NCBI GenBank assembly: GCA_002269645.1
Contig: NIVC01005090.1
Location: 1 to 26,493 of the forward strand
DNA: 26,493 bases
Source of the DNA: Macrostomum lignano
Lineage: Eukaryota
Direction: 5' to 3'
Part shown: piece after piece, positions 1 to 26,493 of the stretch
How the letters are laid out: every line of letters starts with the position of its first letter
Position numbering within the stretch: position 1 is the first letter of the stretch
Translations under genes and position numbers: made by a program
Notes under the pieces: model-generated
The model's database searches: none
What the model saw: the letters and a program-made list of their open reading frames with translations, nothing else
Told to the model about the DNA's origin: nothing

Positions 1-2
1 AG

Positions 3-521: not shown

Positions 522-599
522 GTAAGAGAAAACTCGAGTTGATTATTGGGTTGCCTAGCAGTAGCTAGGGCCTAGAAGTGATTGTTCCTTGATTACTAA

Positions 600-2007: not shown

Positions 2008-2139
2008 GTTAGTTAGGGCTAGGTTTTAGGTTAGGGCTAGGTTTTAGGTTGGAGTTAGATTATGGGTTAGGGTTAGTGTTAGAGCTTAGGGATTTGAGCT
2101 TAGGATAGGGTCTAGGTTAGGTTTAGGTAGGGTTAGGTT
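2008..2139 (+). repeat. Degenerate telomere-like (TTAGGG/TTAGG) array
   Basis: Irregular GGTTAGG, GTTAGGG and TTTAGG units, with the same strand polarity as the array at 7137-8215. Confidence 0.8.
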
Positions 2140-3748: not shown

Positions 3749-3815
3749 TTAAGAGTGCACAGTTGAGATGGGAGGTAGCTGGAGTAAAAGCAAAACTTAC
3801 CCACCTGCGCAGCGA

Positions 3816-6913: not shown

Positions 6914-6994
6914 GCAGATCAGAGGCTTCCCTCCATCATATAATATAGTAGAGAAAAGCAGCCGAGTGCAGACGGTATGAAATCAACCCAGTGC

Positions 6995-7042
6995 CAGGGA
7001 CTGCTAAATACTACGAGCGTATGTAGTATTTAGTAGTCCCTG
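6995..7042. other. 20-bp inverted repeat (hairpin) with the footprint TACGAGCGTA (7012-7021) at its apex
   Basis: CAGGGACTGCTAAATACTAC ... GTAGTATTTAGTAGTCCCTG, one mismatch. Confidence 0.85.
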
Positions 7043-7136
7043 CCCACTGCCTTCGCCGGGAAAATCACAGAGGAAAATGCAAATCCAGTTTGAACGGGAG
7101 CCTTGAAATCTGACCGCCAGCAAATCGAATTTGGTT

Positions 7137-8215: not shown

Positions 8216-8971
8216 TGAGTTGACAGTCAATGTGTGGCAGTCAAATGTCGCGGACCTGTCAGCTGAGACGAGAACACTCGCTATCAAAAAGTGCATCTGA
8301 CAGATTCTGTAACCCTGCTGTCAGCTCATATAGAAATTTGCATTTTACCTAAATTAAAGCTGACAGATGTGCAACTATGGACAGCTGAAGTGGAAGGATG
8401 CACTCTTGATTTTCTTCGAAAACTTCCGAAAACTCAAGCTGTACATTCAAAGCGGCCTACTAGAATTCTGCCAATATTTGCAAGTGTAACGTCCTGTGTT
8501 GTTAAGTAGTCCTTGGCCTGGAACACGCGTGAGTTCACAGGCGAAGTCCTGGCAATGACCAGCTGACAGCCAGTGGAGCTCGTCACGGGTCGCTTTTGAG
8601 CGCGCATGCAGAGGCCGGCACCCGATTGACATGCCGGCAAACAACTGGAAACAGAAGATCCAAGCCATTGCTCTGCAGGCCATGCAGCCGCAGCAGGCGC
8701 TCTGAGCACTGAGATGGAATTTTGTATTTTAAAGTCGTCCTTTAGTGCCCCCGTTCAGTCTTACAAATAAATGAGCAGTGTTGGGGATTACTTCATTGGT
8801 AAACTAAATACGTGTATGAGCATTTTGGTAGGCAGGTAAGCTAAGTGGGTGACTGCAAGCCCTACTGTCTGTAAAACTCAGCATTGCACGGACTGAGCTG
8901 GAGTTGGTTCAAGATGGGCGAGAAAGCTTCAGTCTCTCGAGGGCTTCAGCAAGCCCTGCAGGCAGCAGTCT

Positions 8972-9856
8972 CTACATCATGTGCGTATCACCGTCTGAGC
9001 CGTCAGCAGAGGCGGCGCCAGCGTTCTCGGAGTCGCTGCTGCTGCCCACGCGGTCAGAGAAAGAGATGCCGTCGTCAGAATAGTCGTCGTCGTGATGGTT
9101 GTTCAGCTGGTAGCCGTTGTCGCCAGCCGGAGGAAAATCGTGTCCGAGCTTTCGGCCAGCGGCTGAAGAGCCCGGCGTTGCGCGCCTCGCGTCGAACGGA
9201 CCGCCGCGAAGTCGCTGCGGCTGCTGCCTCGCCGGGAAGCTCCTGGCGGGAGCGCCGCCGGGAAACTGCAGACTGAACTCCGCGTCCTCCGCCTCTACCG
9301 AGTTGCCGCCGCGGTCCTGCCGCACGCTGGGGCGCACAACCAGCGAGCCGTTCTCGGCGATCCAGGAATCGAGCTGCAGGACGAGTCGCAGCTCGCTCGG
9401 CTCCGTGACGACACGCCGCCCACTGCCCGCCAGGTTGCTGGCGTTGGTGGCCACCGGCTGCGGCTCAAGCGAGCGCTGAAGCGTCTGAAGCTTTTCCCGC
9501 TTTTGCTGCGGCTGCTGCTGCTGTTGCTGTTGTTCCTGCTGCTGCTGCGGCGGCTGCTGAAGCTGCTGGCAGTTCTTCATGTACATTGCAATCTGGTTGA
9601 AGAGCTGCTGCACTTCCTGCTGATGCTGCTGCTGCTGCTGCTGCTCGTGCTTGTGGTGTCTTTCCGCTTTTTGTGTTTTCCTCTTTCGCTGTTGCTGCTG
9701 CCCGCCAGCCTTGCCGCTGGCTGCTCCCGCTGTCACCGCAGGTGCGGGGCTGGGCTCTTGCTCTTTTATCTTGTTAATGACCTTCTCGAACTGCGCTGCC
9801 AGCTGAGCAGCCGTTTGAAAGAGCTGCTGCTCCGTGCTGTCGCCGCTTTCTGCCAT
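8972..9856 (-). CDS. Hypothetical Gln-rich, largely low-complexity protein (294 aa), single coding exon
   Basis: Intact GC-rich ORF with polyQ tracts, a basic RKRK patch and an acidic tail. A 3' splice acceptor TTTTATTCTAG lies 15 nt upstream of the ATG. Confidence 0.7.
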   Translation of the reverse strand: MAESGDSTEQQLFQTAAQLAAQFEKVINKIKEQEPSPAPAVTAGAASGKAGGQQQQRKRKTQKAERHHKHEQQQQQQHQQEVQQLFNQIAMYMKNCQQLQQPPQQQQEQQQQQQQPQQKREKLQTLQRSLEPQPVATNASNLAGSGRRVVTEPSELRLVLQLDSWIAENGSLVVRPSVRQDRGGNSVEAEDAEFSLQFPGGAPARSFPARQQPQRLRGGPFDARRATPGSSAAGRKLGHDFPPAGDNGYQLNNHHDDDYSDDGISFSDRVGSSSDSENAGAASADGSDGDTHMM

Positions 9857-11617
9857 CGTTCTGCTTGACCACTAGAATAAAATCAGCTGGCTTGCTGCGC
9901 GCATTTCTAAAGACTGATATTCTGCTTTTGGGCTTTTGGTCGGCAGCGCCTCGTGACCCTGTTTGACGCTTTTAGGCCATAGACGCGCGTTTCGATGAAT
10001 CGAATTTCTAATATAAAGTTGCATGCAATGATGGAGTTTAGCCAGTCCTTCCGTTTTCAATAGGTGCACGGTGTTCGGATGCTAAACGCTCTAGGAGATT
10101 ACATATCAAGATGAGTCGACAGACACTCAGAGTCTCTGCATTCGACACACATGGTATCAGTAAATTTTGTTTCCCAGCTGCCACCGGTTCAAAGTACTTA
10201 CTGGGGAAGTCACGGTTCTGTGAGATCAGTTCTCTGTTCTCATCAGTATAGCAAGAATTAAGTTTCTTCACGTAGAAACTTAAAACTTTTCTGTCACACA
10301 AACGTCACCAGCGTCTTTTAACACAACGGCAAATATATACATATGTTTGTATAAAATACATTGTATATTACTTAATGTACGAAGTCCAGAGTAGGGTCGA
10401 TTCAGTCCGGTAGAGATTCAAACGTACAGAAAGAAACAGAGGAACGTAGAAAGGAAGATAGAAGCTCGGCACTGTGTGAGACGGAACGCGTTGGCAAAAC
10501 AAATTCTGTTTCTGTTAGAGTTGGTTTTCTTAGTATTTTATTACTGCACAGAATCCACACAGAAGGCTGACGGACTGGCTCGAACAGAAGGTTGAAGCGT
10601 TGAAGCTACGAGCAGTTCAAGAATGCAGAACTCCGTCGCGACTCCAGCTGACCATGCCACAGCATCCGAGCCGCACTGCTCACAGCCGGTGCAGGAGGCG
10701 CTGCTGCTGACGCTGCAGGCTCCCCACCGACAAGGACAGGCGCGCTCTCCAGGGATGCTGTTCTCCAGCTATTTAAGGCCCCACCAACAGAGCATTTTCG
10801 CCGTAAATTTTTCCACGCCGTTAAACAATAGAATAAAAATAGAAGCCGACAGCGGATGGATGTGCATGCAAATACACGCTTTTCAAAACTGCCTTCAGCA
10901 AAATGGCAGTCACTCTCTTCATCCCTCCTACAGTTGCCATAATTCAGGCGACTGGCAACTGTGGCCCAGTTGTGCGATCCGATAAAGAACCGGATCGATC
11001 GGCCGCCGCTGCCATTTAAGTTAAAATGGAATCCTCATCTTCCCATTCATCCCTTCTGTAGAAGCTGTTTGGAGGAGGATCAATAAGGGTTTTCTCTTCT
11101 TTTTTAGGGTCTGAGCAGCATGCTTTAGCGTTGTTTTTGTTGTTTGTTGTCTTTTCGCTTAATATTACAACCTCTTTAATGGTTGAATGATGTCCTCAAT
11201 ACACAAACATGCTGGTAAGTATCGGTAGAGCCTATTGTTTTTCAGTTTATTCACGATGCGCGTCAAGTTATATTTTTTAAATAAAATTTCACAAAATAAA
11301 TTCCTTTGAAAGTTACAAATGTTAAAAATTAAATTCTTCCCAATCAATCAACATTACGCGGTAAGTTGGTCCAGTTATAACACTTCACAACAGAGAAAAT
11401 TAAAACAAAATGAGTAAAAAAGCATCCAGGCTGTAAGCCCATCTGAGTCATCAAAATTACAGGCAATGTCAAAAACAAAAAAAACTTCAGACAAATTATT
11501 TCAACCCTAAAATATCCCGGGTGCCAGAAAAATCTTGAGGCTCATGTCGACTTGTTAAGGCTTTATTGAGTATTGAAGTATTGAACCTGTTGAGTATATC
11601 CCGCTAATAGCCAGTTA

Positions 11618-12374
11618 CGAGGCCAAAAAGTATCGAGAATTGCTGTCTAACTCTGAAAATACGAGCTTTTACTAAAATTAATCGATGTCTTCTTGCAGCT
11701 CAGCTTCTCAGCTTTTATAGGAAGCAGTCTTGTGTCGGAGAGTTTTGGTTTTAATGATTTTTTAATGATTTTTCTAAATAGCTGTCATACTGCTATGAGT
11801 ATGTCACAAAATGAACAATGAGCAACTAATCAACATCAATTTTCCGGTGAAACTCGGCAAGAAGCTATCGGAATGCCTCCAGCTGCTTCACGAGGTGTAT
11901 AGAGAAGATGCTAAGTCTCAGGCAAGGGTGTATTAGTGGCACAAGCGATTCCAGGATGGATAGGAGAGCGTCAAAGATGGGGCCAAAGTTCCTCACTGAC
12001 GGTCAGAAAAAACTGCAATTAAACATCGAGACATTGAGACAGTTTTTGGCCAAAAGATAGGTCGCAGAGTTGAGCCACCCACCTTATTCACCAGATATAG
12101 CGCTGTGTGATTCCTGGCTCTTTAACAAGGTGAAGCAGGTCCTCAAAGGATCCAGATTTCAAAACTAGGATGCCATCAAGGAGAGTGTGACAAGGGTGCT
12201 GAGGGGCGTCATGAAGGAGGGCTTCCAGGGCTGCATCAGGAGCTGGCACTAGCGATTGAGGCGATGGGTTGAAAGTGGCCGCAATTAATTTGAAGGCTGT
12301 AGTTGACTAAATTTGCATAATTTGTTCTGAAATTTTTTGTAGCTAAATTCTCGTTCCATTTTGGCCGGACCTCA
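11618..12374 (+). mobile_element. Internally deleted, decayed mariner element (irritans/Hsmar2-like CGAGG termini), ~757 bp
   Basis: Left end TA|CGAGG-CCAAAAAGTATCGAGAATT. The right TIR reverse-complements to TGAGGTCCGGCCAAAATGGAACGAGAATT. Transposase remnants: MNNEQLININFPVKLGKK...ARVY*WHKRFQDG*ESVKD (HTH, 11811-11980), PKFLTDGQK (linker) and LSHPPYSPDIALCDSWLF (YSPDL motif). Confidence 0.93.
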
Positions 12375-12693
12375 TGCATCTCAGATTGACCGTAAATCTC
12401 TTCATAAGTAACTAGCACATGACTTATCTATTTCACAGAAACCCCGAATGCAAGCTTGTTAACTTCCAAAAAACTATACCTACGACTAAAACCCAATTTT
12501 AAAAAGCAATGTAAGTGCTTACTAATACCCCAGGTAAAAACATAATGGAAGTCTTAAAAAACACTAATAAACGTATTGTACCGAAAAAACAACCACATCC
12601 ACCACCGAAAAAAACTTGACAAACGGGTCTAGGACAGTTAACCGAAAAACATTGAACGACCTTATACTCAATAGAAAAAGGGCCTCAACGAAA

Positions 12694-15600
12694 TTAACCG
12701 AAGTAGCCGTCTTTAGTTGACTCGGCCTGTCGTTTCTCGTCCGACTGCGCGAGCTCGACACTGGCGCCAGCTTGTCCAAGACCGAGCTTGGCGCTAGATT
12801 CTTGCTTACTCGAGCGCTCTTTGCTGTCGCCGTCTTTAGTTGACTCGGCCTGTCGTTGCTCGTCCGACTGCGCGAGCTCGACACTGGCGCCAGCTTGTCC
12901 AAGACCGAGCTTGGCGCTAGATTCTTGCTTACTCGAGCGCTCTTTGCTGTCGCCGTCTTTAGTTGACTCGGCCTGTCGTTTCTCGTCCGACTGCGCGAGC
13001 TCGACACTGGCGCCAGCTTGTCCAAGACCGAGCTTGGCGCTAGATTCTTGCTTACTCGAGCGCTCTTTGCTGTCGCCGTCTTTAGTTGACTCGGCCTGTC
13101 GTTTCTCGTCCGACTGCGCGAGCTCGACACTGGCGCCAGCTTGTCCAAGACCGAGCTTGGCGCTAGATTCTTGCTTACTCGAGCGCTCTTTGCTGTCGCC
13201 GTCTTTAGTTGACTCGGCCTGTCGTTTCTCGTCCGACTGCGCGAGCTCGACACTGGTGCCAGCTTGTTCGAATTGGAGTCCTGCGCTTACGCATTTTCTT
13301 TCAGTTTTATTGTGATTTGGGTTTTTGTGTGTAGTTTGATTTTCTGTTTTAAAGGCAAAACTGGTTTTTGATTCGTCCTTAGATAGGTGTATTCCTTGTC
13401 TTGAGGTGGACTTTCTTTTTGTTAGAGCTCCTTCTTTGGTTTCTTTTTCCTTTTTGTATATCCCGATTTGCTTGGTTTGTTCGCCTCCGCCGGCCTCGAC
13501 TTCGTATTGTCCGTGGCCTAGGGTTAACGCAACTTCTTGTTCATTGGTTCTTGCTGCTATTTTATGTTTTCCCTTTTTTACTTTGGCTTCCGTTCCTATG
13601 GATCCGTGCGTGATGCCTAATTGAGTGTCGTTGCGTTGTACCGATAAACTGAAGTCATCATCTGTTGTTTTAACTTTTAGCTGATCCTGCTTTTTTTTAA
13701 TCTGATGCCATCTCCAGACAACTCCACTTTGGTGTCCTTTGATGCGTTAGGCTTCCTCGGTTTTTTTCCTTGCTGTGTGTATTTTTTTGGCATGGAGGAA
13801 TGATTCATATTGTTTTGCTTATTAGCAGTTGATAATGTTTTCGAGAGAGTTCTCTTGGCTTGATCTACGGCTTGGCTTGTCATGTCTCCTATGCTCTTTC
13901 TTAAATAATCCTCTAGTATAGCACTGACTACTTCGCTGGTTTGCGACCGCATTTGCTGCCCGACTTTGCTTGTCAGTTGGCTGAGTTGCTCCACATTTTT
14001 CATATTCTTTTCCTTTAGCTTGAGATTAGGGTCGTACTTGATTTCCCAATCGTCGCTTCCGTCAATTAAAAAACAATCTATATTTTTTACAATGCTGCCA
14101 ACGACAGTTCTCAAGTTCTCAGCCTGCACTCCGATGGCTGCAGCATCCACCGCTACGGCTGCCAGCCTGAGGAAAACTAGGAGCCCTTTAAAGTGTTCTG
14201 CTAATTCAGAGTTTAAATTGCTCAGATATGACTTTATTGTATCCATGACCTTTTCCATCGCTTCTGCATCGTTCAGAACTTTGTGTGCTGCCTCTTCCGT
14301 GGCTTCTTTAAGTGCCTTCAATACATTGATTTGCAGTTCCGGAGTAAGCATGGAGAAATCTAATACATTCATTTTTTCCGTCGCTTGATTTTTCTGCACG
14401 CACATGGGAGCTGCTATTCGAACAACAATGTCGTACAGCCTTCCTCGCTGGGCTTCTTCGTTGCACTTTCCCTCGATATCAATTTCAACATTCTTCTTTA
14501 ACTTAGAAATTAAACTGTCAATGAGCCGTCTTTGAGCATCAGTTACAGCAAAGTCTGCTAAAAACTTAAACACGGGATTGTCTACTATACCTTTGAGCAC
14601 TTTTACAGTATTTTCTCCAACCAACTTTGTGACCAAAGATCCAGCTTTGGAATAATGTTTACTTCCAACTGAACTCATATTTTTCGCCACCGCTCCGAAC
14701 TTTGTCGATGATTTTAAGTACCCAATAACTTTACTAAAGCCGAAAGTAAGTAGGGATAAGCCAATGTTTAGAGCCTTGCTTTTCAACCAAGACGTAGAAT
14801 CAAATTCTCCTTTAAGTAAACCCATGGTACCGGCCAATATGTCACTGAAGCCTTCAAAGACTAAGTTTACACCACCAAAAGAAAACATGCAGCCAATGGC
14901 GATCTCGATTAAACCTAAAATTATTACCGCGATCGCGAATCGATACTGGGGTTTTTTCATCACACTGAATAGCCTCACGTGACCCAATAAGTAGAGAGAC
15001 CTCAGCTCATCAAGTGTAATTCTGTCTGGGTCTTTCTCGATGTCCTTTATACAAGTGCTAATAGCGACGATTTGGCCATCTTTTAATTCTTCAAGTTTTT
15101 TTAACTTTGTTCGATTCCAGCTTTGTACTTTAGGATAATATCAATCCTAGTAGTACATTGGCCGGATAGTGCACTTTTATCAGACTTTTTATCCAATTTG
15201 AATGCTTGATCGGATGTAACCTCTTGATCAGCCTGATCCACTTGATCTGTTTGATCGGATGTAACCTCTTGATCAGCTTGATCCACTTGATCTGTTTGAT
15301 CCGATGTAACCTCTTGATCAGCTTGATCCACTTGATCAGCTTGATCCACTTGATCTGTTTCATCCGCTTTTAATCTTGCTCCAGAAAAAAACCGAGTCCA
15401 CAAGGAGTGGGCTAGCCACGTTTCCTTAATTCTTGTTTTGGCTTCCTGCAAGTCGTTTTTGACATCTTCAATGCCGCTATCACCTTTCATTATCTTCGCA
15501 TACGCTCTATTGTAGTAGGCTATTGAAGACCAGGCGCAATTCATTGCAATAGCTTTAGTATATAAATCAATTGCTTTTTGGAAATCCTCATGTCGTAAAT

Positions 15601-18600
15601 ATTTGTCCGCAAGTTTTAGAGTTTGAAACGGACTCATTAAACAATCTGATTCAATATTTTTTGTGGCGTCCTTGAAAGTTTCCTTGACTTCTCTAACATA
15701 CTTGTCTGTGTTTGGTTTGCTGAAGTCGGCAGTGTGGCACAAAATTGTCTTTAGATGCATTCCCCAGATTTCTTTCAGACAGTTCAATTTGAGCTTTAGG
15801 TCTATATCATCCTTATTTGCCTGGCGGTACTTCGTTAATGAGCGACTGAAGCGACGAAACAGGCTTTCCTCGAATTCTACTTCAGGCATAGAAAATTCCG
15901 TATGATTTCGCAGCTCTTGTAAACTGGCCTCCTGCCTCACTTGCTTCATCTCCTCTACCGAGTCGCAGTCAGCAAAACAAGCGCTAAGACCCTCCTGGCT
16001 TAGAATCAATGTTGCAGAACCCCGCTGACCCTTGCGTCCACTGCGACCACACACTTGCTCCTCGACTCGCTGATTCAAGGGGAGAAATGTGACAAGTACG
16101 TGCAGACCTCCAGCTGCCTCTGCTTCATCGTTTACTTTCACGTCCGTGCCTCTGCCTGCCAAATTCGTGGCCACAATCACATCTCCTGGACCAACAATCA
16201 GCTCAGACTTTGTATCTTCGTTCCTGATGTACCTTTTAGGCGTAACCCCGTGACATCGGCGAGTTACCTCGTTGAGAACGAGATCAGCACTGTTTATGTC
16301 CTCACAAACAATCAGAGTTGGCCGGTGCCTTTCCTTCTTTACTAGCTGGCAAAGCTTTGAGATGCACTCAGATTTGGTTTCGGTGACAATGCCCGGGTTC
16401 TCTACTAGCCGGCGTTCCCTGAACGGAGGAATATAGTTTAGCTGTACTTTGTAGGTTTTGCGCATGAACTCCTTCTCGTGCTCCTCCCCGAGAGTCCCAG
16501 AAACGCCGAACACCGCGGTGCCATACCGACGGAAAAAAGATAAATTTGATAAAAAGTTTGTCTCTAAACCAAGAGGTCTCATTTGTAGACGATGCTTCAG
16601 CTGCAGGAACTGCTGCAGTCCATCGCTCCATCTCATGTTTTCTTGAACCACACCTGTGTGCTTGAAGTCCACAGGCACAGCATCTCCGTCCTGCAAGAGG
16701 TAGTCGCGTCCAGGCTGCAGAACTCCTGCGGTGAGAGCACTGTTGATCCAGACGTCAAGCATATCGTCGATGAACCCTTTCAGGTGTTTTGGCATCGGCA
16801 GTTGCTTTTCCTTGCTAGTTACTTCCGTTTTAGAGTCGTCAGTTGAATCCTTTAAGGATGTGCTGTAATTAATTTGGGATTGAACATCCTCTCTTTTTTT
16901 CGAAATGAAGTCCTCAATATTGGCGAACAGCAATCTGCAGACACCGCCTTGGTTCACGAGAAGATGCGTGGAACAGTCTTCTGAATGCTCCAGTGGTTCT
17001 ATTTCCGCATTTCTGTAGGTGTAGATGTTGCACTGGGAAACTGGAGCAAGGAATCTGCGGCAGTGGTTAGAATTTCTCTTACTCTGCCGATATCGAATTG
17101 AGATAAATCAACGGGATCTACAGTCTGATTCAAGAAGTCCTTCTTTTCCTCTGAGTTTATCAGTTCTTTCTGAAGTAGCGTTTCAATTAACTCATTGAAT
17201 TCCTCATCGGACGTTAGTTCTTTAAGGAAGTAGAGAAATGTCATTGCCTGCTCTGCAGCCATTTCACCTCCATGCACGGTGTTTAGAACATGACAACCGA
17301 ATGTGGCTCTGAAAATCGTCGGAAAAACTGGGTCCAGCATTTTCATGTCTCCCACATCCTGAGAAAGATACGTTAGCTGCACTCCCTGGTCGAGCAGCAG
17401 TGAATCGACCTCATCCACAATAACTGCGTCGAAGCTTCTTGTGCCACGAATTTCCTTAAACTGGAACTCGTGCCGCAAAACGTCACCTGCAAATGAAGAC
17501 ACCGTGCCATACACTATTTTGGACTCATAACACTCTTTTGGTTTTTTATGATTAATGTTGCAGCTAACGGTAACTTTGCATTCTTTATAAAAATCATGCC
17601 ATTCTTGGCAGTCTCTTTCAGCCAGAACTTCAGAGGGTGCAACGACGTCAACTGACGTCCTCCCGAGAAGCAGAAGTCCGACGGCGGTCATTGCCACAAT
17701 GCACGATTTTCCTTCGCCAGTCAGAATCTGCAAAATTTGTCCGAATTTCTTGCTAGCAGAGCTTTTGAGCAAGGCAGCAGCACTGAGAAGCTGTGTGTTC
17801 CTCGGAAGATATCCTTTACATTTTCTCACTGCCTTTGACAGATCAATCAAAATTTTGTGCAATGGTGGTTCCTTTCCACGCTCCCATAGTTTGATTTTGC
17901 TAAGCTTTTCGGCGATAGTTTTTTTGCTTTGCCAAATCCGGACAAATCAAAATATTTCGCGGTTTTACTGACGACATCTTCAAGCTTGAAAAGCTGATCC
18001 TCTTCAAATCCTCCTGATTCCTTAAGTTCAGCTAGAAGTTCGCCGAGAGTCCTCTGTGCTGCCTGATCCTTTTCAAGTCGCTCAATGGTGGCCTTTGAAA
18101 TAGTCTCGCTGGAATCCAGAAGACCTTTTAAATCGCAGCGGCTCAAAATCATCATCTGGACGACCTGTCTTACTTGATCAGGTGTCGAGTCACTAGAGTG
18201 AATGAGCTCCATTAGCTTGAGCGTGCTTGCAGAATCCCAGTGCTGCATTGACAGAATGAGCTCAACCACACATTCGGTGTCCGATTTCTTATCCAGATAG
18301 TCAGCGATGCCAGCAGTTTTCAGCATTGCTGTCACGACGGATCGAAGTCTCTTCAAGTCGGTGTCTGCTTTCTGGACAGGCCAGAGTCGAGTAATATCTT
18401 CAGCCACTAAGAGTAGCTTCAGCAGAATTTTTATGACAGGATTAGTCTCATCCTGATTGTTTGCCATTAGCAGCTTATCCAGATGTTGTATGGCACAATT
18501 TGTGTCACGGAACTGATGAAGAAGTTCATCCAACTCGTCTTCGTTCAAAAGGTCTTCAGCGGATTTTTCTTTAAAAAAAAGCAAAACCAGCAAGCCATAA

Positions 18601-20161
18601 TACACCATGTCGATTTCTGTTTTCGGAAAGCAAAATTCTATGAGAACCTTGTTTGCAGCGTCTAGCACTTGGCCAGCCGACTCTTCATCTAGAAGCTTAA
18701 GAAGCGACAAGTGTGTCGCCATTTGATTCTCTTTATTGGGCTGAGGAATTCGTGACTTCCAATGACTACGAAAATGATTCAGGAATTGCGATCTTGAAAC
18801 GGCTTCTACAGTTCTCAAAGCATTTTGACCACTCGCATTCTGACTTGCTTCTTTGAGACGGGTAAAAACATCTCCGACAGCATATTCAATGCTTTTATCT
18901 ATTTGGCTCCTGATATCTGCAACAGTAGCATCGGAAACTCCAAGGCTTGCATAGTCTTTTGCACACTTGCCGCGCACATGCTGTATCGAGACTCTCAAGC
19001 CTTTGAACAATCTCTGCATTTCTTTTGCTCTATGGTTTTCCCTTGCTGTTGCCACTTGCCGTCCAAATTTCTCTGTTTTCTGTAGGTTCTCAGACGCTTG
19101 CTGATTTCTCCTTATCTTTGCTCGCTGCTCTTCAATTCTTCTGGCGATATCGGCCTCCTTTCAGCTAGTTCAGCTTCGAACTCTCTTCTTCCTTTTTCAA
19201 GCTCCTCCTGCTGCGACTGCAGTCTCTTCTTCATCTCCAAGCTATGCTCTTCCATCTCAATCTGCTTCTTCTGCATCTCGCTCTGAAAGCGACCTTTCCT
19301 TTCTTTAAACTGCGCTTGCAGACGAGCTCTGTGTTGATCAGCTTCCGCATTGAGGCTGTTAAACCTTGCACTTGTCTCTGACGTAATCCGCTCCTTTTGG
19401 TGCCGAAAGCTTTCCAGTCTTTCCATTCGAATCTTTTCCACCTCTTTTTTTTCCTCCAGAAAATCCTGTTGGCCTTTAGTTTTCCAGTCTGTCTTTTGCT
19501 TCTGCAGTTGAGAGAAAAGCTTTTCTCGATTCTTATTCTGCTGGGAAGAACTCTCAGCCTGCCTGCCTAACCTGTCTTTTTGCATCTCCTGGCACCTTCT
19601 TTTGAACTTATCTTCTCTGCGGCTGAATGCGTTTAATGCCCTGCTTCTTTCTGAATTCCACGCCTCCCATTTTTTTCTGTTTTCTTCTAGGATCCTATCC
19701 TGCTGATCCTTCTGCTCTTTTATCTTTCTTTCGTCAAAGAGTGTCCGTTCTCTGTCACTCTGCTTCAGCTGCTCTCGAGCTGTTTGCATTCTTTGCTCCC
19801 GCTCTCTGCGTTTCCTGTCAGCAAACATAGACTTCGTTTCATATTTATATTCTGCCTCCTGTTTGCCGTCATAGCTCAGATGAATAAATCCCTCTGCCGG
19901 TGAATCCAGCTTCCATTCTTTGTTTCTGATCCCATTGCACCAAGACTGCATGTTTGGGTTTTGAATGGTCTCGTGTTTACCGTGCATTCCGTGTTTGAAG
20001 TAAATGTTAACCGGTAGACCTTCGTAGTCATAATGAACTGATCTACCAGATGGCAAATTGATGAGCTCGGATCCAGCACCAACTCCTATCACCTTGTACT
20101 TCGCTGCCACGCTCCAGTCCTCTTCTGTGTCGTTACAGAGCTTGCTCCCGGTGTTGCCCAT
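12694..20161 (-). CDS. Giant eukaryotic SecA-like DEAD ATPase (~2490 aa after repairing five 1-nt homopolymer deletions). Parts: myristoylation motif, coiled coil, SecA NBD1/NBD2, TPR, hydrophobic hairpin, C-terminal repeats
   Basis: SecA-family motifs appear in order: QILTGEGKS (Walker A), APSEVLAERD, YGTVSSFAGDVLR, VIVDEVDSLLLD (Walker B), WSDGLQQFLQLKH, GVSGTLG, IVATNLAGRGTD, GGLHVL...EEQVCGRSGRKGQRGS. Frames join at ~19155, 17919-25, 17035-37, 15106-08 and 13691-98. Stop TAA at 12696-12694. Confidence 0.85.
12707..13264 (-). repeat. 123-bp coding tandem repeat (41 aa, QAGASVELAQSDEKRQAESTKDGDSKERSSKQESSAKLGLG), ~4.5 copies
   Basis: Units start at 12707, 12830, 12953, 13076 and 13199 and are nearly identical. 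They are in frame with the repaired SecA-like C-terminus. Confidence 0.93.
15206..15360 (-). repeat. 45-bp coding repeat (DQTDQVDQADQEVTS) built from 9-bp DQx subunits
   Basis: About 3 copies, seen in both DNA and translation, between the TPR and the hydrophobic segment. Confidence 0.9.
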
Positions 20162-20258
20162 GCTGCAAAGTTAATGCAGTTGTTATTAAATTGAAGCAAA
20201 TCAAAAAACGCACGGACACTAAAAGCAGCAAAAAATGGAGAATGTATGTTCCACGTTC

Positions 20259-20270
20259 TACGAGCTCGTA
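20259..20270. mobile_element. Probable 4+4 mariner footprint TA-CGAG-CTCG-TA
   Basis: The first four bases of both mariner ends are juxtaposed between two TA, in non-coding DNA upstream of the SecA-like ATG. Confidence 0.6.
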
Positions 20271-20829
20271 CCTCGTTAACGAGAAGTTTGCTTCCACACC
20301 CTGATTGCTGCCCACATTCGCTACTGGAGAAGGGTAAGCCATCGATAGCAGGCGCTTTGGTCTGGAGCTGACCTTCGAGCTTCATTCTAGAGCCAGTTCA
20401 TTCTAGCTTACGAAAATCCTTATTTTATCCTTTTTATCCAATGGGACCCCAAGGAAGGGACTTTGGTGGGAAGTCTCGACACTAACTGGTTTAATTCTAG
20501 TCAACTGGTCTGACAAGTTATCAATTGCAGTAGTTTGTTTGAATCCCCGCATTGAAACTTAATGTATAAAAAATGTAGTTTTTTTGTAAGCAATAAAATC
20601 ACAGTGACCAACAGCCTATGAGCTATTAGTATGCAGTCAAATTCCATATTGGAGCTTCAGTTATAAATTCAAATCACATTCGAGTACATTATATGCTTGC
20701 ACAAAGCAATAACGTTTCTTTCTTACCTTTGGGCATGTGACGTGTATAGCAACCAGGATCAAGATTTTTAAGCAGTGATTAAACGAGAATTTTTTTATAA
20801 TGTTTTATATTTATAAATGTCTTACTTAC

Positions 20830-21245
20830 CAGTCCACTTTATCTCATATTTGCGATGGTGCAAGAATTAGTACCTTGTAGAAGGTAACTGCAAGAAACAA
20901 ACAGCATGGGTTAGAAATTTAGCGCACTGTAAGTACGCAATTATAGTGTAATACACTGCAAAATGTACGCAGAAATGGCCCGCCTCCTCGGGTCCATGAG
21001 CACACAAAACTGAACTTCTCTTTCTGTTGAACAGTACGAGCGTAGACCGACTGCAGGTACAGATGAAACTTTCTCACCTTTTAAGAAAGGATAATTTTTT
21101 CGTATAGTGAATTTGCATGCACTCTGCCTCTTAGCTGAGCCACAATAAGTGAAGTTGTCTAGATTCCTAGAACCTCCTTCCCTAACAGGTGCATGAATCT
21201 ACTGTCAGATAAGATTTTCTGACATATTTTTCTCTAAAACTTCAA
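20830..21245. promoter_or_regulatory. Putative bidirectional promoter / spliced 5' UTR region of the divergent gene pair
   Basis: Minus strand: small exon 20887-20830 (TTGTTTCTTGCAG acceptor, GTAAGT donor) and an acceptor 1 nt before ATG 20161. Plus strand: donor CAG|GTACAG at 21057 and acceptor CCCTAACAG at 21188. No start site can be located directly. Confidence 0.35.
21035..21044. mobile_element. Probable mariner excision footprint TACGAGCGTA
   Basis: Exact match to the recurring 10-mer, non-coding. Confidence 0.6.
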
Positions 21246-24200
21246 ATGAACGACGACAGGCACGACTTAAAGCACCATTTTCGCTTTCTAGTCAAAAACA
21301 AAAGATCCACAAGGCAGAATGGAAGCCTGGAAAGTGTGCTCGTCTTTGATTTGGAAGGACCTCCTTCTTTTTCGTCCAGTAGATGGACAGAAGCGAGCAA
21401 GAAGCAAAAGACAAACCACGCGGAAGTCGAAAAATGGTTTGTCAAGTTTAGGAGGAGCCATGAGGAGGTAAGACCACTTTTGAAGAGATTTTGATTTACA
21501 TCATTTTCAAATTCAAGGTGCCGCCTGTACTTTAGGTCAAAAGCTCACTGTAATCAGCAAGCTCACTAGATGCAGAACAATAATTTTAGTCAATTATTTT
21601 TCTGAAATCTATAGCACACATACATACAGACAACTCATTTTTTGTATATAGGATCCTGTGATGCCAGTCGGCTTATTCATACCTTTCCTTAAAGCTTGAG
21701 GCTAGAGGCTAGCTAGCCTAGATGCATAAGGCTTGTATTGTACGAGCGTACTTTACTCTCTCGTGTTGCACTGGCGCAATTGGTGGTGGTTCGCGTTGCA
21801 AATCGTCCTGAACAAGTGCAAGCAGTGTATAGCAGGCTCCTAGCTGCAGGCCGGTCCAAGGACAGCGGGGGAGGCAAGAGTCGCTCATTCCTCATCTTAT
21901 TAATGAAAAAACGAATTATCTTCCATTTTTTCTCCATTAAGGTTCCAAGTGAATTTTCAAACAAAACTACTGAGGAACAGTTAGGTGCGACTCAAGTGCA
22001 ATACGGTGGCCAGACATGCTTTTTGGTCTATTGTCTACACACGTCATTCCTCTCTTCCCGGGAAATAGGAGTTTATGCGCCATTTTTTAGTTCTCGGCTC
22101 ACGGTGCGCCGTTGCAAATGAAGAGTCCTTAGCTATCCATACTAGAAAGTATCTGTACCAAGAATATGTTTTCGTTCCCTGCCATCTTCCACCTTCACCA
22201 AAATAGACATGAGATCGCGCTAGATGGCTTGAGTAACCAAATACTGAGATGCGATTCTATCATTCTCAAACCGCTGTGAGCGGACAATAAGTTAGTTTGG
22301 GACTACTTCGAACAGTGAGCAGTTTTCTCTTTGCTTGCGATTCTCCTGATCGCCCTGTGTGCTGCAATTCCGCCGAGCGTTTCAACTTGCATTGTTTTAT
22401 AGAACGGGCGCTCTATAGCTCCCAGTATATGATAAGATGACGCGGTTGTGTTCAATCAAAATTCGTCAATGCAGACCTTGAGTTCTTTGTGTTTTTTACT
22501 CCCCATACCCACTCGCTCCAGATCAGATCTACACGTGGGATGTAGAAGAAGGGTGTTTGATTTGCGTTTTAGTTTGTAAACAGTGAGTTCGTGCTGCATT
22601 TAACCGTCTCTCTATACCCTTGTAGATTAATGTGTAGTGCGTATGCTGTGTCATCTCAATTCAGAATCGTCCTATTTCCTTTGCTACTCCTTTCAGAGGA
22701 AGGAACAATGGAGCTGCAATGTCGAAGTAAATAAAAAAAGAAGAGAAGTGTCTTTGGCAGTATTAGGCATGACAATCTCGGATAATATCAAAATTAGTTC
22801 GACAAAGATCACGGTGGCCGACTGCAAGCAGGAATTTAACCGATTGGTCTTGGAGTCCACAAAGGGAATTAATATCTCATCTAGATGCATGCGAGGGTCC
22901 AAAATAAAACTTCTTTCTTCAGAAGTTGTGGTGGCAGAAAGCTCAGTTGTTCAGTGCTCGCAGTTGCTATGCGAATCAACGATCCGGGAGGTGTCATCCA
23001 GCCTGATTGTGTTTGGCAGCATCTTGCCGCTTCCCTGTTCAACTGAGGAAGCTGATGGCAGCCTTTCCATTCGAGTTAATGGAAATATTGTAGTAAAAAT
23101 GGATGCAAAAATCGGATATTCGGACCGGCATAAAAAGGCCAAAGAAGTAAGTTTGATCAGTACTGATGGCATAACAAATGTTGGAGTCGTATTTGCTGAA
23201 CACAAGATAGAAATCTCGGCAAAGCAGATTCGCTCTCCAGTATCGAGCAAGGAGTCTGCAGCTCGTGTGTCAAGATACCTCAGTGACGCTGGCAAGCAAA
23301 GCAAGGCTGAAAGGAAAGCGAGAGACGCCGACAAGCAACTGATCGATTCGTCCACAGGTGATTCTGCAGCAGTGAAAAAGCTGCTATTTTCTGGGGCTGA
23401 TCCTACATTCAAAGACAAAAAAGGTGAAAGCGCCATTGCGAAGCTCAGAAAGGCGATTGCTGATCTGGGAACTGCGCCGAATCCACCGGGTGTCGCTGAA
23501 AAGAATAAACTCAATAGGAACGCGATACTCCTGAAGTGGGAGGCAAAAAGTAAGGGAAAATACCAGTCACAGAGTATCTGCTGTCTTGTTAGTGAGGATG
23601 TTGCCAACCTCAGCCAGTTTCTGGGTGCAAAAGTTCATCTTGAAATTGGTGGGGATGCGTTTGTCGAAGAAAGGTCTGTATGGAAAAGTGGGTCAATCAG
23701 CGGTTGGTGCCGCGGTAGGCTCAATGTCCAAGGAGAAGTCAAGATAGAAGAGCTGAATAAATTCGAGGTTGGAAAATGCAGAGTCCAAGCAGGGGCAGAA
23801 TTGTGGTTAGTGAATGGCGGTTCATTAAGAGTAGTAGGTAGTCTTGAAAACATTGGATGCATATACAACAGCTTCAAGAAGTTCTCAATGGATATTGAAA
23901 GTTTCTCACAGAGTATAAATGCGGCTGCTTATTCTGAGAAGGAGAACAAAGCTGAGCTTCAAATTACCACAAGGAGACCAAGTGAGTCCGTGTTTGGCAG
24001 GCTGGGTGGCTACCGAGTCACTGTCTGCGCATTTGCTCAGCTTGCGCTTCAGGCTGAAGTTGAGGCCATGGAGTCTTTGGTAGGTGTCATTTATAGTCCA
24101 GCTGGTCATATTTCGCTGCAAGGAAGTATTAAAATAATTGAAGGACCACTTGTTGTACATTCCTGGCTTCGAACCTGTGGCTTTGGACCTGACGTAGAGT

Positions 24201-26481
24201 TAAACTGCAGCATGGAGTGCGCGGGCATTGTCATTCCTGCTGCAACAGTGAACTTTGGTCCTAAGAGCCAGTTGCTGTGTCCTCCACAGTGTAGTCAAGA
24301 ATATTGCGCGAATAGCATCGAAATCGTGTTAAACAAAGCTCAAACACAAAGCGGATCAGTATGGGAGTTTTTTACTCGCGAATTGAGCATCTTCATCGGG
24401 ACTAAATTCACTCACCAAGGCAGCCTGAAGCTTTGCAAGAAAGGTGAAACAGGTCGTGAGACAAGAGAAGAGCATGGAGCGTCTGTATACATAAGGGGAA
24501 ACCGATTTGTTAACAAAGGAATGATAAGTGGAATGAAGGCCTTATGCATTGATTTAGACAGTGATTGTGAGCTAGACAGAAACCTTGAAGTACATGACTC
24601 CATTTCAGTTTTGACAAGAAAGCATCTTACAATATCGTCGAATACTAAATTGAAGTCCGCTAACGGAAGCTTGGTGATCAGTGCACATTTCATAGCTAAT
24701 TTTGGTGCTGTTCACAGCCACACGGATTTAATCATCGAGTCCGGAGACATTGATAATTCAGCTGGGAGCATTGCATCAGACCATGGAATCGTCTTTATTG
24801 CCTGGTTAGGGCCACAGGAAAGCTGCTACCTCGAGGGCCATGTACAAGCTGGTTCGCAGCTCGTGCACAGCAGTAAATTCTAATATGCTGCATATCCACG
24901 CCAAATCTCACAGCCAGCCATTGCAACTGCAAATTCCAATGAACGGCGCCAGCTTCCAATGCTTGTCAGGGTCCGTAGCACTTCATTCAAAAGTGTGCTC
25001 GCCTGAGCAAACTTTTCTTCACTTAAGAGCTTCTGAATCAATTGAACTGCAGCGAAGCGTCACTTGCGACACACTCCTCGTTCAGCCGTCCCCGTCTGCT
25101 TCGGAGATAAAGCTGACTGTGTCGAAACTGGAGAAAATAACGGTGGGCTGTTTGTTAATCAGCCACGTAAACGACCGGCAGAACCGAAATGCTAAAGCAA
25201 TTGTAATTGAAGGTCAGCAAGGGTCAAAATTAAAATGCAACAAATTTATGGGGTCTGAAATCAGTCTTGAGCTGAAAATGGCCGCTGAAATGGATATGCC
25301 AAGCCAGATTATGGTGCAGAAGCTGTCGATTTCACAGGACTTGACCGTTCAAAGCCAGCAAAGCGTGTGCGGAGAATTTCTGGTAAACTGTGAGACTGAA
25401 CTGGAGATTAGTGGCAATGCGGAGTTCGTTGGGGCAAGCAGCTGCCTTGTGAGAGCTCGTAGACTTTTACTCTGTGATGCGGCCGTTCTTCGCCTCTTGC
25501 GTCTGAGACACGTGACAATTCTGGCAAAGGAAGTCGTGACTGAAGGCAGTTTTTTTCGCTTCTTTGGAAGATGAAGACCGTGCCGCGATAGTGGTACACG
25601 CGGATGAATTTTATTGTCGTGGATTGATTCAGTTCGGAGGTGAAAGCTCGACAAATCTCATTTTGCATGTCAACGAATGCACAATAAGCGGTCGCATCGT
25701 TCACGGCAATCAGCCATCGCTGATGCTGATCGAATTCTTCAAAACTGCCACGGTTCTGCCGGAGAGCGAAATTGATTTAGGGAAACTTCTGCTAATTGGG
25801 GGATGCGAAGGTACATGCAATTTTAAGTCTGCAACCCTTTCAGTGTCTGAGTTAATGGCTATAAAATCTGTGCGCCGGTTGTCCTGGGAGACCAGCAAAG
25901 TCAAGCTGAACCAGGCACGCTTCATTGTAAAAAACGTTGAGCAGGTCGCTCTTAAAAAAACTGAAATCATTTGCCCTCAGGGCGTTGTACTCGACGAATC
26001 GCTAGTGGGAAGCTATGAAGTGAGCACTGCTAAAGTAAAAATCTGTGCTCAGGAGTTCACCCTGGAAACTGGTTCCGAGATTCGCAACATTGATACACTT
26101 GAAATTCACGCCTGGAAAAACGCCAGTTTTGAACTAGGCAGCAAAGTACAATTTTGCGGTAACTTTAATCTAAGAAGCAGATTCATTTACTTTCAGGCGT
26201 CCGTACACGATACGGGTGGCATTGATTGTCAAGCGGAAAGTATTGTTGTGACCGGGAGGGTGGATTGCTTTAGATCGCTGTCCGTTGCTGCATCTCAGCT
26301 GCTGCACAATCAGGGAACGTTGAGTGCAAAAGATGTCAGACTCGATGCTACCGCTCAGATGCACATGTGCTCGAGCAGCGAGGATTCAGTTCTACCAGCG
26401 ATAATTTCAGCAAAAAGCTCATTGCAGCTGAACTGCTACATCATGTTGTCTATATATGCCGAATACACAGCCCCACAATAG
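21246..26481 (+). CDS. Filamentous-haemagglutinin/CdiA-like beta-helix repeat protein with an ankyrin-like insert. Exons 21246-21467 and 22697-26481, two frameshifts, ~1334 aa, may continue beyond the window
   Basis: Phase-0 donor GAG|GTAAGA (21468) matches phase-0 acceptor CCTTTCAG|AGG (22696). Repeated motifs: ITNVGVVFAEHKIEISAKQI, FVNKGMISG, IANFGAVHSHTDLIIESGDIDNSAGSIAS, LHNQGTLSAKDVRLDA. Ankyrin-like DSAAVKKLLFSGADPTFKDKKGESAI. Frames join at the AAA near 24874-76 and the T7 at 25550-56. Confidence 0.7.
21741..21750. mobile_element. Probable mariner excision footprint TACGAGCGTA (intronic)
   Basis: Exact match to the recurring 10-mer, inside predicted intron 21468-22696. Confidence 0.6.
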
Positions 26482-26493
26482 CAGTCAAGAACA

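What the first reader, a model, noticed from the sequence alone, without database searches (positions are those of the whole stretch)
12694..26493. Candidate two-gene system: head-to-head SecA-like ATPase and haemagglutinin/CdiA-like beta-helix protein
Seen: two very large, nearly intronless genes with more AT-rich codons than the gene at 8972-9856. Their start codons are 1.1 kb apart in divergent orientation, each with spliceosomal signals near the 5' end. Established: in bacteria SecA drives export of two-partner-secretion passengers such as FHA and CdiA, which are beta-helical adhesin or toxin carriers. Inference: a co-regulated, possibly horizontally acquired and domesticated motor-plus-cargo module acting in adhesion, defence or toxin delivery in a eukaryote. 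I know of no description of this pairing, but cannot search to confirm that.
Basis: partly seen in the sequence, partly recalled or inferred. Interest (0 to 1): 0.85.

Follow-up and report, generated by a model that had tools for sequence, protein, structure and literature searches.

The report
Two unlinked giant flatworm genes
Two real, very large, intron-free flatworm genes, a membrane-anchored SecA-like ATPase and a beta-helix protein, sit head to head, but none of their relatives elsewhere are neighbours, so they are probably not a motor-plus-cargo system.

Summary
The window is the whole 26.5-kb scaffold NIVC01005090.1 of the flatworm Macrostomum lignano.

- The minus-strand gene (20161 to 12694) is a paralogue of Mlig033771g1. 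It carries a genuine SecA-type motor: NBD1, preprotein cross-linking domain and NBD2.
- The plus-strand gene (22643 to 26481) is predicted with high confidence to be a beta-solenoid. Its best structural matches are bacterial autotransporter and two-partner-secretion adhesins.

Three parts of the finding do not hold.
- The start codons are about 2.5 kb apart, not 1.1 kb.
- Both reading frames are broken by single-base frame switches, five and two, mostly at 7-8-base homopolymers. Neither gene is annotated in the record.
- The linkage does not recur. None of 5 SecA-like loci has the beta-helix module within 10 kb, and none of 3 beta-helix loci has a SecA-like gene.

The beta-helix protein has no signal peptide and no TPS domain, and it carries an ankyrin-like insert, so a secreted cargo is unlikely.

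The SecA-like gene belongs to an animal-wide family that appears uncharacterised. Family members share an MGN (myristoylation-type) start and a conserved hydrophobic hairpin.

Verdict: two independent neighbours, each interesting on its own; the proposed two-gene system is not supported.

The parts
12694..20161 (-). Giant single-exon SecA-like ATPase gene, about 2,490 codons. It is a paralogue of M. lignano Mlig033771g1 and reads in five frame segments.
   Evidence: tblastn of P0001 is colinear over 20161-14094 at 48-72% identity per segment. Stop-to-stop segments are 19115-20170, 17850-19160, 17002-17946, 15104-17107, 13680-15140 and 12697-13746.
20141..20161 (-). Start codon followed by MGNTGSK, an N-myristoylation-type start.
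   Evidence: Identical start in P0001. 17 of 46 long family members begin with MG, mostly MGN.
17359..17838 (-). SecA NBD1 (DEAD-like), with the motifs LTGEGKS and VDEVDS.
   Evidence: Pfam SecA_DEAD 4e-25. Aligns to SecA residues 58-205 of 8ya0_A.
16604..16750 (-). C-terminal part of the SecA preprotein cross-linking domain.
   Evidence: Pfam SecA_PP_bind, 27.6 bits against a cut-off of 23.5.
15974..16363 (-). SecA NBD2 (helicase C-like), with the motif TNLAGRGTD.
   Evidence: Pfam P-loop_SecA 1.6e-10 and Helicase_C 5e-5. Aligns to SecA residues 234-529.
15206..15346 (-). In-frame 45-base acidic tandem repeat (DQVDQADQEVTS...).
   Evidence: TRF: period 45, 3.1 copies, 95% matches. Translation.
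14730..14951 (-). Conserved hydrophobic helical hairpin, with the motif G..LI.EG.SD...G...G.F.W..W..K..
   Evidence: Kyte-Doolittle 19-residue mean up to 2.6. Invariant G/E/D/W/K columns across 16 animal homologues. Predicted helices 54-73 and 78-98 at pLDDT about 60-77.
12697..13746 (-). C-terminal extension with 41-residue tandem repeats. The DNA repeat is 123 bases x 4.6 copies at 12706-13267.
   Evidence: Open frame of 350 codons. TRF result. A related 123-base repeat array follows the paralogue in L001.
19157..19160 (-). Frame switch 1 (one base missing, at an A3 run).
17905..17925 (-). Frame switch 2, at a 7-base homopolymer (17919-17925).
17026..17053 (-). Frame switch 3.
15096..15113 (-). 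Frame switch 4, at a 7-base homopolymer (15096-15102).
13680..13746 (-). Frame switch 5, at an 8-base homopolymer (13691-13698).
20162..22642 (.). 2.48-kb divergent intergenic region, 41% G+C. It holds two short unsupported ORFs (21246-21494 and 21738-22121).
22643..26481 (+). Giant beta-solenoid gene, about 1,280 codons in three frame segments, ending 12 bases before the scaffold end.
   Evidence: Stop-to-stop segments 22631-24880, 24810-25571 and 25540-26478. Seven distant homologues found by exhaustive phmmer. Start placed by homology.
23249..23548 (+). Helical, ankyrin-like insert (LL.SGADP motif).
   Evidence: Predicted helices 161-260. phmmer hits P0129, P0132 and P0133 are ankyrin-repeat proteins. 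Foldseek gives ANK matches.
23558..24880 (+). Beta-solenoid core, modelled at pLDDT mostly above 90.
   Evidence: AlphaFold2 with an 8-sequence alignment: mean pLDDT 79, pTM 0.73. Top PDB folds are Ag43, EtpA, SepA, Hbp, Pet and HMW1. BFVD best E = 3.9e-4.
24810..24883 (+). Frame switch 6 (an extra base somewhere in this overlap).
25540..25574 (+). Frame switch 7, at a T7 run (25550-25556).

Best explanation
These are two independent genes that happen to be neighbours on a short, repeat-rich M. lignano scaffold.

Gene 1 encodes a member of an animal-wide family of roughly 2,000-2,500-residue proteins built around a SecA-type ATPase motor. From the N-terminus the parts are:
- an MGN start of the N-myristoylation type;
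- a small beta domain;
- about 250 residues of charged coiled coil;
- a helical domain;
- the motor (NBD1, preprotein cross-linking domain, NBD2);
- a TPR-like helical region;
- an acidic repeat;
- a conserved hydrophobic helical hairpin;
- a helical tail with 41-residue repeats.

Inferred mechanism: the protein sits on the cytosolic face of a membrane, held there by the lipid anchor and the hairpin. It uses ATP-driven clamp movements of the SecA-type motor on an extended polypeptide. It does not act as a classical SecYEG partner.

Gene 2 encodes a cytosolic beta-solenoid with an ankyrin-like insert and no signal peptide. It belongs to a very sparse family of giant animal proteins of up to 4,193 residues. 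It most likely acts as a rigid scaffold or binding surface, not as a Sec-exported adhesin.

The seven frame switches are either residual homopolymer errors of the PacBio-based assembly or very recent inactivating mutations. I lean slightly towards assembly error.
For: Shown:
- The window is scaffold NIVC01005090.1 of GCA_002269645.1. Only two small genes are annotated in positions 1-19856, and neither is the giant minus-strand gene.
- Gene 1 is colinear with P0001. Its SecA domains are supported.
- The family is spread over fish, amphibians, a mussel and a flatworm.
- The MGN start and the hydrophobic hairpin are conserved in the family.
- Gene 2 has only 7 true relatives among 1.84 billion representative proteins, including a clam and an octocoral. 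The beta-solenoid model is, and the ankyrin insert.
- There is no linkage in 5 SecA-like loci (L001, L005, L006, L009, L010) or in 3 beta-helix loci (L002-L004).
- Four of the seven frame switches lie exactly at homopolymers of 7 bases or more. Such runs cover under 1% of the coding DNA.
- There is no in-frame stop in about 3,770 codons.
- The paralogue's annotated C-terminus in L001 is also cut by a frameshift.
- The assembly is Canu on PacBio reads, polished with Pilon (PMC5730564).

Inferred: membrane anchoring, the mechanism of the motor, and the cytosolic location of gene 2.
Against: - Two giant single-exon genes side by side are unusual in a genome that averages about 5 introns per gene (PMC5730564). 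This could reflect a shared origin.
- Only 10 kb on each side of 8 loci was examined, and I could not search the M. lignano genome for further copies.
- Bacterial giant proteins are reported to combine SecA-like domains with adhesion and beta-helix modules (bioRxiv 10.1101/2023.11.21.568195). A functional association of the two folds therefore has some precedent.
- No expression data were available.
- The assembly was Pilon-polished, so seven surviving indels may be real. In that case both genes may be dead.
Confidence: 0.62

Rival explanations
1. First reader's model. The two genes form a co-regulated module in which the SecA-like motor exports or inserts the beta-helix protein, which acts as an adhesin or toxin carrier.
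For: - The genes are divergent, with one shared 2.5-kb intergenic region.
- Both are atypical single-exon giant genes.
- The motor keeps a preprotein cross-linking domain and has its own membrane hairpin.
- The beta-helix protein lacks a signal peptide, so it would need an unconventional export route.
- Bacterial giant proteins are reported to fuse SecA-like domains with adhesion or beta-helix modules.
Against: - Linkage is absent in 8 of 8 related loci.
- The closest paralogue of the motor, in the same genome, has no such neighbour within 10 kb.
- The SecA-like family is widespread (378 hits; 120 listed, from fish, amphibians, a mussel and a flatworm). The beta-helix family has 7 known relatives. 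Most motors therefore have no such cargo.
- The ankyrin insert, and a weak OTU match in one relative, point to a cytosolic protein.
- Both frames are broken and neither gene is annotated.
Confidence: 0.07
2. Both genes are dead copies: recent pseudogenes in a satellite-rich, poorly transcribed region. The locus then has no present function at all.
For: - There are seven frame switches in 11.3 kb of coding DNA, although the assembly was polished with Illumina and RNA-seq data.
- Neither gene is annotated in a transcriptome-driven annotation.
- No identical or near-identical protein exists in the 5.8-billion-sequence collection.
- The scaffold is full of satellites.
Against: - There is no nonsense codon in about 3,770 codons. 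By a rough estimate that I did not compute, neutral decay long enough to give 7 indels should also give several stops.
- Four of the seven switches are at homopolymers of 7 bases or more, the classic long-read error site.
- The annotated paralogue on a 112-kb contig shows the same kind of frameshift.
- Polishing is unreliable between near-identical copies of a neopolyploid genome (inference).
Confidence: 0.3
3. The two genes share an origin but not a function. They arrived together, for example from one bacterial endosymbiont or a giant-virus donor, or they sit in an island of lineage-specific conflict genes. Their adjacency is then a historical relic.
For: - Both genes are intron-free, and their relatives in a mussel and in unidentified ENA contigs are too.
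- Giant-virus 'haemagglutinin repeat' proteins are among the fold matches.
Against: - Both genes have the same G+C content as ordinary M. lignano DNA.
- No bacterial or viral sequence relative of either gene stood out.
- The paralogue's locus has no such neighbour.
- Both families are found in several animal phyla, so any transfer would be old and independent.
Confidence: 0.08

Closest known systems
Bacterial SecA and accessory SecA2 (preprotein translocase ATPases)
   Same: It has the NBD1 (DEAD-like), preprotein cross-linking and NBD2 arrangement. All 25 solved-structure hits are SecA or SecA2, the best at E = 6e-37, and the Pfam SecA domains match. The accessory SecA2/SecY2 system is the true bacterial example of a motor genetically linked to an adhesin cargo (established knowledge).
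   Different: - Scores are 100-144 bits against equivalog cut-offs of 725-1,493.
- It has about 1,700 extra residues.
- It has an MGN lipid-anchor-type start and its own hydrophobic hairpin.
- No SecY-type partner lies in the locus.
- It is a eukaryotic nuclear gene with no sign of organelle targeting.
- The helical scaffold and wing domains are not clearly detectable.
Animal 'protein translocase subunit SecA-like' or uncharacterised LOC proteins (fish, amphibians, Mytilus, M. lignano Mlig033771g1)
   Same: Full-length colinearity with Mlig033771g1 at 60% identity. It shares the family architecture: MGN start, SecA motor and the hairpin motif. The gene is also single-exon in Mytilus and M. lignano.
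   Different: This copy is unannotated, frame-broken and 40% diverged from its annotated paralogue. It has a longer C-terminal repeat tail. I found no paper on the function of the family.
Non-canonical SecA-like domains inside giant bacterial proteins and effectors (Amoebophilus effectors, actinobacterial giant toxins, Omnitrophota giant proteins)
   Same: A SecA-like motor is embedded in a very large multidomain protein instead of a stand-alone translocase. In the literature these are associated with toxin, adhesion and beta-helix modules (PMC3482391, PMC8195603, bioRxiv 10.1101/2023.11.21.568195).
   Different: I could not test sequence relatedness to those bacterial proteins here. Here the motor and the beta-helix are separate genes on opposite strands, in an animal.
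TpsA exoproteins (filamentous haemagglutinin, CdiA, EtpA, HMW1) and autotransporter passengers (Ag43, Hbp, Pet)
   Same: It is a predicted long beta-solenoid, and these are its best PDB fold matches. Two distant homologues touch the Pfam haemagglutinin repeat Fil_haemagg_2 at 19.9 and 22.2 bits, against a cut-off of 22.
   Different: - There is no signal peptide, no TPS secretion domain and no TpsB partner.
- The window protein has no Pfam match at all.
- The Foldseek E-values against PDB are weak (0.06-4).
- It has an ankyrin-like insert.
- It is eukaryotic and probably cytosolic.

Membership tests
SecA superfamily motor | DEAD-like NBD1 with Walker A and B motifs | tested here: met
   SecA_DEAD 4e-25; motifs TGEGKS and DEVDS present.
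SecA superfamily motor | Preprotein cross-linking domain inserted in NBD1 | tested here: met
   SecA_PP_bind scores 27.6 bits against a cut-off of 23.5, but only its C-terminal half aligns. It is weaker in fish homologues.
SecA superfamily motor | NBD2 (P-loop_SecA / helicase C) | tested here: met
   P-loop_SecA 1.6e-10 and Helicase_C 5e-5. Aligns to SecA residues 234-529.
Canonical SecA / SecA2 (orthologue) | Whole-protein score above the curated equivalog cut-off | tested here: not met
   Best scores are 144 bits (P0001) and 113 bits (window segment), against cut-offs of 725-1,493.
Canonical SecA / SecA2 (orthologue) | Helical scaffold and wing domains with the two-helix finger | tested here: inconclusive
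   Alignments to solved SecA structures stop after NBD2. One NCBIfam SecA2 model alignment reaches position 742 of 762.
Canonical SecA / SecA2 (orthologue) | Works with a SecY-type channel | not testable with these tools
   No SecY-like ORF turned up among the window ORFs scanned. The Plug_translocon hit at 2946-3437 lies in a tandem-repeat ORF and is spurious.
Animal giant SecA-like ATPase family | Full-length colinear homology to family members | tested here: met
   P0001 residues 1-2012 align in order over 20161-14094. Fish and amphibian hits cover up to 97% of the query.
Animal giant SecA-like ATPase family | MGN (N-myristoylation-type) start and a post-motor hydrophobic hairpin with the EG.SD motif | tested here: met
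   The window protein starts MGNTGSK. 17 of 46 long members start with MG and 29 of 46 carry the motif. Actual lipidation was not tested.
TpsA / filamentous haemagglutinin / CdiA | N-terminal Sec signal peptide | tested here: not met
   The N-termini of the window protein and of P0137, P0123 and P0128 have no hydrophobic leader, judged by inspection of the sequences.
TpsA / filamentous haemagglutinin / CdiA | TPS secretion domain (Pfam Haemagg_act) | tested here: not met
   The three ORF segments have no haemagglutinin-family Pfam match at E <= 0.1 (the only hit is FAM70 at E 0.084, below its cut-off), and the homologues show no Haemagg_act match at E <= 0.01.
TpsA / filamentous haemagglutinin / CdiA | Haemagglutinin repeats (Fil_haemagg, Fil_haemagg_2) | tested here: inconclusive
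   The window protein has none. The distant homologues P0121 and P0140 score 19.9 and 22.2 bits against a cut-off of 22.
TpsA / filamentous haemagglutinin / CdiA | Right-handed beta-helix fold | tested here: met
   Residues 264-704 of the AlphaFold2 model are all short strands at pLDDT mostly above 90. The top fold matches are beta-helical adhesins, at weak E-values. BFVD best E = 3.9e-4. Handedness was not measured.
TpsA / filamentous haemagglutinin / CdiA | Adjacent TpsB (Omp85/POTRA) transporter; for CdiA also a C-terminal toxin and an immunity gene | tested here: not met
   No such Pfam match among the window ORFs scanned. The C-terminal part is at the scaffold end, so the toxin and immunity features are effectively untestable.
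Conserved two-gene system | The gene pair recurs as neighbours in other genomes or among paralogues | tested here: not met
   None of 5 SecA-like loci and none of 3 beta-helix loci has the partner within 10 kb. The whole M. lignano genome could not be searched.

The most novel reading that the evidence does not exclude
The membrane-anchored animal SecA-like ATPases are an undescribed eukaryotic polypeptide-translocation or extraction machine. In this reading the adjacent beta-solenoid, which has no signal peptide, is one of its clients. The pair would be a split descendant of giant bacterial effector or toxin proteins that combine SecA-like and beta-helix modules.
Probability: 0.05. Interest if true: 0.85.

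Novelty: new member of a known kind. Interest (0 to 1): 0.3.

Why it matters
The proposed pairing would have meant a bacterial-style secretion module domesticated in an animal. The evidence does not support that.

What remains is worth recording.
- **An uncharacterised animal ATPase family.** An animal-wide family of giant, probably lipid-anchored and membrane-inserted SecA-like ATPases exists. Databases often label them simply 'SecA', and I found no published study of their function. Animals are not otherwise thought to use SecA outside organelles, so this family is a clean target for experiments.
- **A rare family of beta-solenoid proteins.** A very sparse family of intron-free, giant beta-solenoid proteins is scattered across flatworm, bivalve and octocoral.
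- **An annotation gap.** Two genes totalling more than 11 kb of coding DNA are missing from the M. lignano annotation, probably because of homopolymer frameshifts.

Tried and rejected
- **Word-indexed homology search for the beta-helix protein.** It returned nothing with either the single sequence or the 8-sequence alignment, although relatives exist. I read this as a failure of the candidate filter, not as true absence.
- **PADLOC defence models.** Only a marginal DpdF hit for the helicase core.
- **Rfam.** No RNA family in the window.
- **Structure of the SecA-like C-terminal region.** The model had a mean pLDDT of 51.5. Only the first 110 or so residues are usable, so I ran no fold search on it.
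- **Hydrophobic periodicity of the beta-helix segments.** No clear rung period in the window protein. A homologue shows a 24-residue period.
- **The ORF at 21246-21494 as exon 1 of the plus gene.** Rejected.
- **A Sec61 'plug' Pfam hit at 2946-3437.** Rejected as an artefact of a 72-base tandem repeat.
- **Literature searches for the animal SecA-like family.** Five queries found only bacterial or plastid SecA papers.
- **Contamination.** Rejected. The scaffold carries a 70%-identical paralogue of a gene on a 112-kb M. lignano contig, and it has the same base composition.

Full report
**Origin of the window.** The 294-residue ORF at 8972-9856 is encoded on exactly one public record. That record is NIVC01005090.1 of assembly GCA_002269645.1 (Macrostomum lignano, Mlig_3_7), and its length of 26,493 bases equals the window. 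The window is therefore a whole short scaffold of this flatworm. In positions 1-19856 of the record only two small genes are called, at 8972-9856 and 4379-6111. The giant minus-strand gene is not annotated. No protein identical or nearly identical to either giant gene exists in the 5.8-billion-sequence collection. The assembly was made with Canu from PacBio reads and polished with Pilon. The genome averages about 5 introns per gene (PMC5730564).

**Anatomy of the minus-strand gene.** Six long open segments on the minus strand align in order to the 2,019-residue M. lignano protein P0001 (BOX15_Mlig033771g1). No residues are skipped, and identity is 48-72% per segment. P0001 itself is encoded by one uninterrupted 6,060-base ORF. 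The gene therefore has no introns, and the breaks are frame switches, not splice sites.
- Each switch corresponds to one missing base.
- Three of the five lie exactly at 7-8-base homopolymers, at 17919, 15096 and 13691.
- A related 123-base repeat array follows the paralogue in L001. The paralogue's annotated C-terminus is also cut short by a frameshift.

**Identity of the minus-strand gene.**
- Pfam finds SecA_DEAD (4e-25), SecA_PP_bind (27.6 bits against a cut-off of 23.5), P-loop_SecA (1.6e-10) and Helicase_C.
- All 25 solved-structure hits are SecA or SecA2, the best at E = 6e-37. They cover NBD1 and the stretch from the cross-linking domain to NBD2.
- NCBIfam scores are only 100-144 bits against equivalog cut-offs of 725-1,493.

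This is a SecA-type motor but not a SecA orthologue.

**The family of the minus-strand gene.** The search returned 378 hits. The 120 listed come from teleosts, sturgeon, bichir, frogs, salamanders, Mytilus and unnamed ENA/Logan contigs, and many are labelled 'protein translocase subunit SecA-like'. Four other members show only the SecA domains in Pfam, flanked by about 500 unassigned N-terminal and 900 unassigned C-terminal residues. Two family traits emerged.
- 17 of 46 long members start with MG, mostly MGN, an N-myristoylation-type start. The window protein starts MGNTGSK.
- A strongly hydrophobic hairpin after the motor has invariant G, E, D, W and K columns across 16 animal sequences.

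I infer a motor anchored on the cytosolic face of a membrane. A structure model of this C-terminal region was poor (mean pLDDT 51.5). I found no paper on the animal family.

**Anatomy of the plus-strand gene.** Three segments (22631-24880, 24810-25571, 25540-26478) overlap by 71 and 32 bases in successive frames. The second switch lies at a T7 run (25550). The frame ends at a stop 12 bases before the scaffold end. The gene is therefore either about 1,280 codons long or is cut there by a further error.

The start codons are therefore 2,482 bases apart, not 1.1 kb.

**Identity of the plus-strand gene.** The segments have no supported Pfam, NCBIfam or PADLOC match. An exhaustive phmmer scan of 1.84 billion representative proteins gave 13 hits.
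- Seven are true relatives at 21-28% identity. Among them are a clam protein (Tegillarca) and an octocoral protein (Paramuricea).
- Two more relatives are giant single-ORF proteins of 3,952 and 4,193 residues on megabase-sized ENA contigs.
- The other six hits are weak matches confined to residues ~200-335, the ankyrin-like insert. The three I scanned (P0129, P0132, P0133) are ankyrin-repeat proteins.
- Two relatives touch Fil_haemagg_2 at about the cut-off, and one has a sub-threshold OTU match.

**Predicted structure of the plus-strand protein.** AlphaFold2 with an 8-sequence alignment gave mean pLDDT 79 and pTM 0.73. Residues 161-260 are helical, and residues 264-704 are an uninterrupted run of short strands at pLDDT mostly above 90.
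- The best PDB folds are Ag43, EtpA, SepA, Hbp, Pet and HMW1, but the E-values are weak (0.06-4).
- In the viral library the best E is 3.9e-4, and giant-virus 'haemagglutinin repeat' proteins and phage beta-helix proteins are among the matches.

The beta-helix call is supported at the level of fold. Membership of the TpsA/CdiA family is not supported, because there is no signal peptide, no TPS domain and no TpsB partner.

**Test of the pairing.**
- I built an HMM of the conserved N-terminal module of the beta-helix family and searched the six-frame ORFs of five SecA-like loci, each with 10-kb flanks. These were the M. lignano paralogue L001, Mytilus L009, and three ENA contigs (L005, L006, L010). 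There was no hit even at E <= 10. tblastn against L001 was also negative.
- Conversely, P0001 finds nothing in three beta-helix loci, L002-L004.

Linkage is therefore absent in 8 of 8 loci. Only 10-kb flanks were examined, and the rest of the M. lignano genome could not be searched.

**Other points that bear on the interpretation.**
- The two genes have 45.0% and 45.8% G+C, the same as the paralogue's locus at 44.9%. Composition therefore gives no signal of recent transfer.
- In bacteria SecA is a general motor and is not genetically paired with TpsA genes. The real precedent for a linked motor and adhesin is the accessory SecA2/SecY2 system (established knowledge).
- SecA-like domains inside giant bacterial effectors and toxins have been described (PMC3482391, PMC8195603, bioRxiv 10.1101/2023.11.21.568195). 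This keeps a small probability alive for an ancestral link between the two folds.

**Are the genes intact?** There are seven frame switches in 11.3 kb and no nonsense codon in about 3,770 codons. Four of the seven are at homopolymers of 7 bases or more, which make up under 1% of the sequence. This pattern fits long-read homopolymer error somewhat better than neutral decay. Polishing should have removed such errors in uniquely mappable DNA, however, and real slippage mutations also favour homopolymers. I cannot decide between the two; I put about 0.3 on real pseudogenes.

**Verdict.** The objects are real and their folds were correctly recognised. The 'two-gene system' is not supported. The most likely reading is two independent neighbours, each a new and unannotated member of a poorly known family.

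Noticed in passing
window 1-26493: The window is the entire scaffold NIVC01005090.1 of M. lignano Mlig_3_7. Within positions 1-19856 the record's gene calls list only two small genes (8972-9856 and 4379-6111). More than 11 kb of coding DNA is unannotated.
   Followed up: yes
L001 15990-16110 and 16431-23466: The annotated paralogue P0001 (Mlig033771g1) ends at a stop created by a frameshift. Homology to the window protein continues in another frame (WKIKFD against WEIKYD). A roughly 7-kb array of 123-base (41-residue) repeats follows it. The database protein is therefore probably truncated.
   Followed up: partly
window 20141-20161 and 14730-14951; P0003, P0004, P0011, P0012, P0024, P0079: Across fish, amphibian, mussel and flatworm members, the SecA-like family keeps an MGN start and a hydrophobic hairpin with invariant G/E/D/W/K positions. 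This suggests a lipid-anchored, membrane-inserted ATPase. I found no published description.
   Followed up: partly
window 7129-8216 and 2012-2076: Degenerate telomere-like satellite: a 25-mer ATTTAGGTTAGGGTTTTAGGTTAGG in 43.6 copies, plus a short 18-mer GTTAGGG-containing array. Both are internal to the scaffold.
   Followed up: no
window 14-499, 2982-3748, 5245-5987, 6213-6559: Four further satellite arrays (periods 18, 72, 14/27 and 23/46/109). They create long spurious ORFs on both strands, including a false Pfam 'Sec61 plug' hit at 2946-3437.
   Followed up: partly
window 11811-12060: Two short ORFs read like the N-terminal helix-turn-helix of a mariner/Mos1 transposase. Pfam HTH_48 is only at E = 0.13, so this is a possible decayed transposon remnant.
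   Followed up: partly
L004 21377-25672: The Tegillarca granosa gene model P0122 (715 residues) looks truncated. The next open frame (23288-25672) continues to match the beta-helix family profile (E = 1.3e-15).
   Followed up: no
P0124 residues 191-297: One beta-helix family member, on a 12-kb Logan contig, has a sub-threshold OTU cysteine-protease match (22.4 bits, cut-off 23.3) upstream of the conserved module. This hints at a link to the ubiquitin system.
   Followed up: no
L002 10001-21859; L003 10001-22582: Relatives of the beta-helix gene are uninterrupted ORFs of 11.9 and 12.6 kb on megabase-sized ENA contigs of unidentified eukaryotes. Several near-identical copies exist (P0134-P0138).
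   Followed up: no
window 8972-9856: The only gene here with a clean ORF is a 63% G+C, glutamine-rich protein of 294 residues. It has no Pfam match, and its composition is very different from the rest of the scaffold.
   Followed up: no
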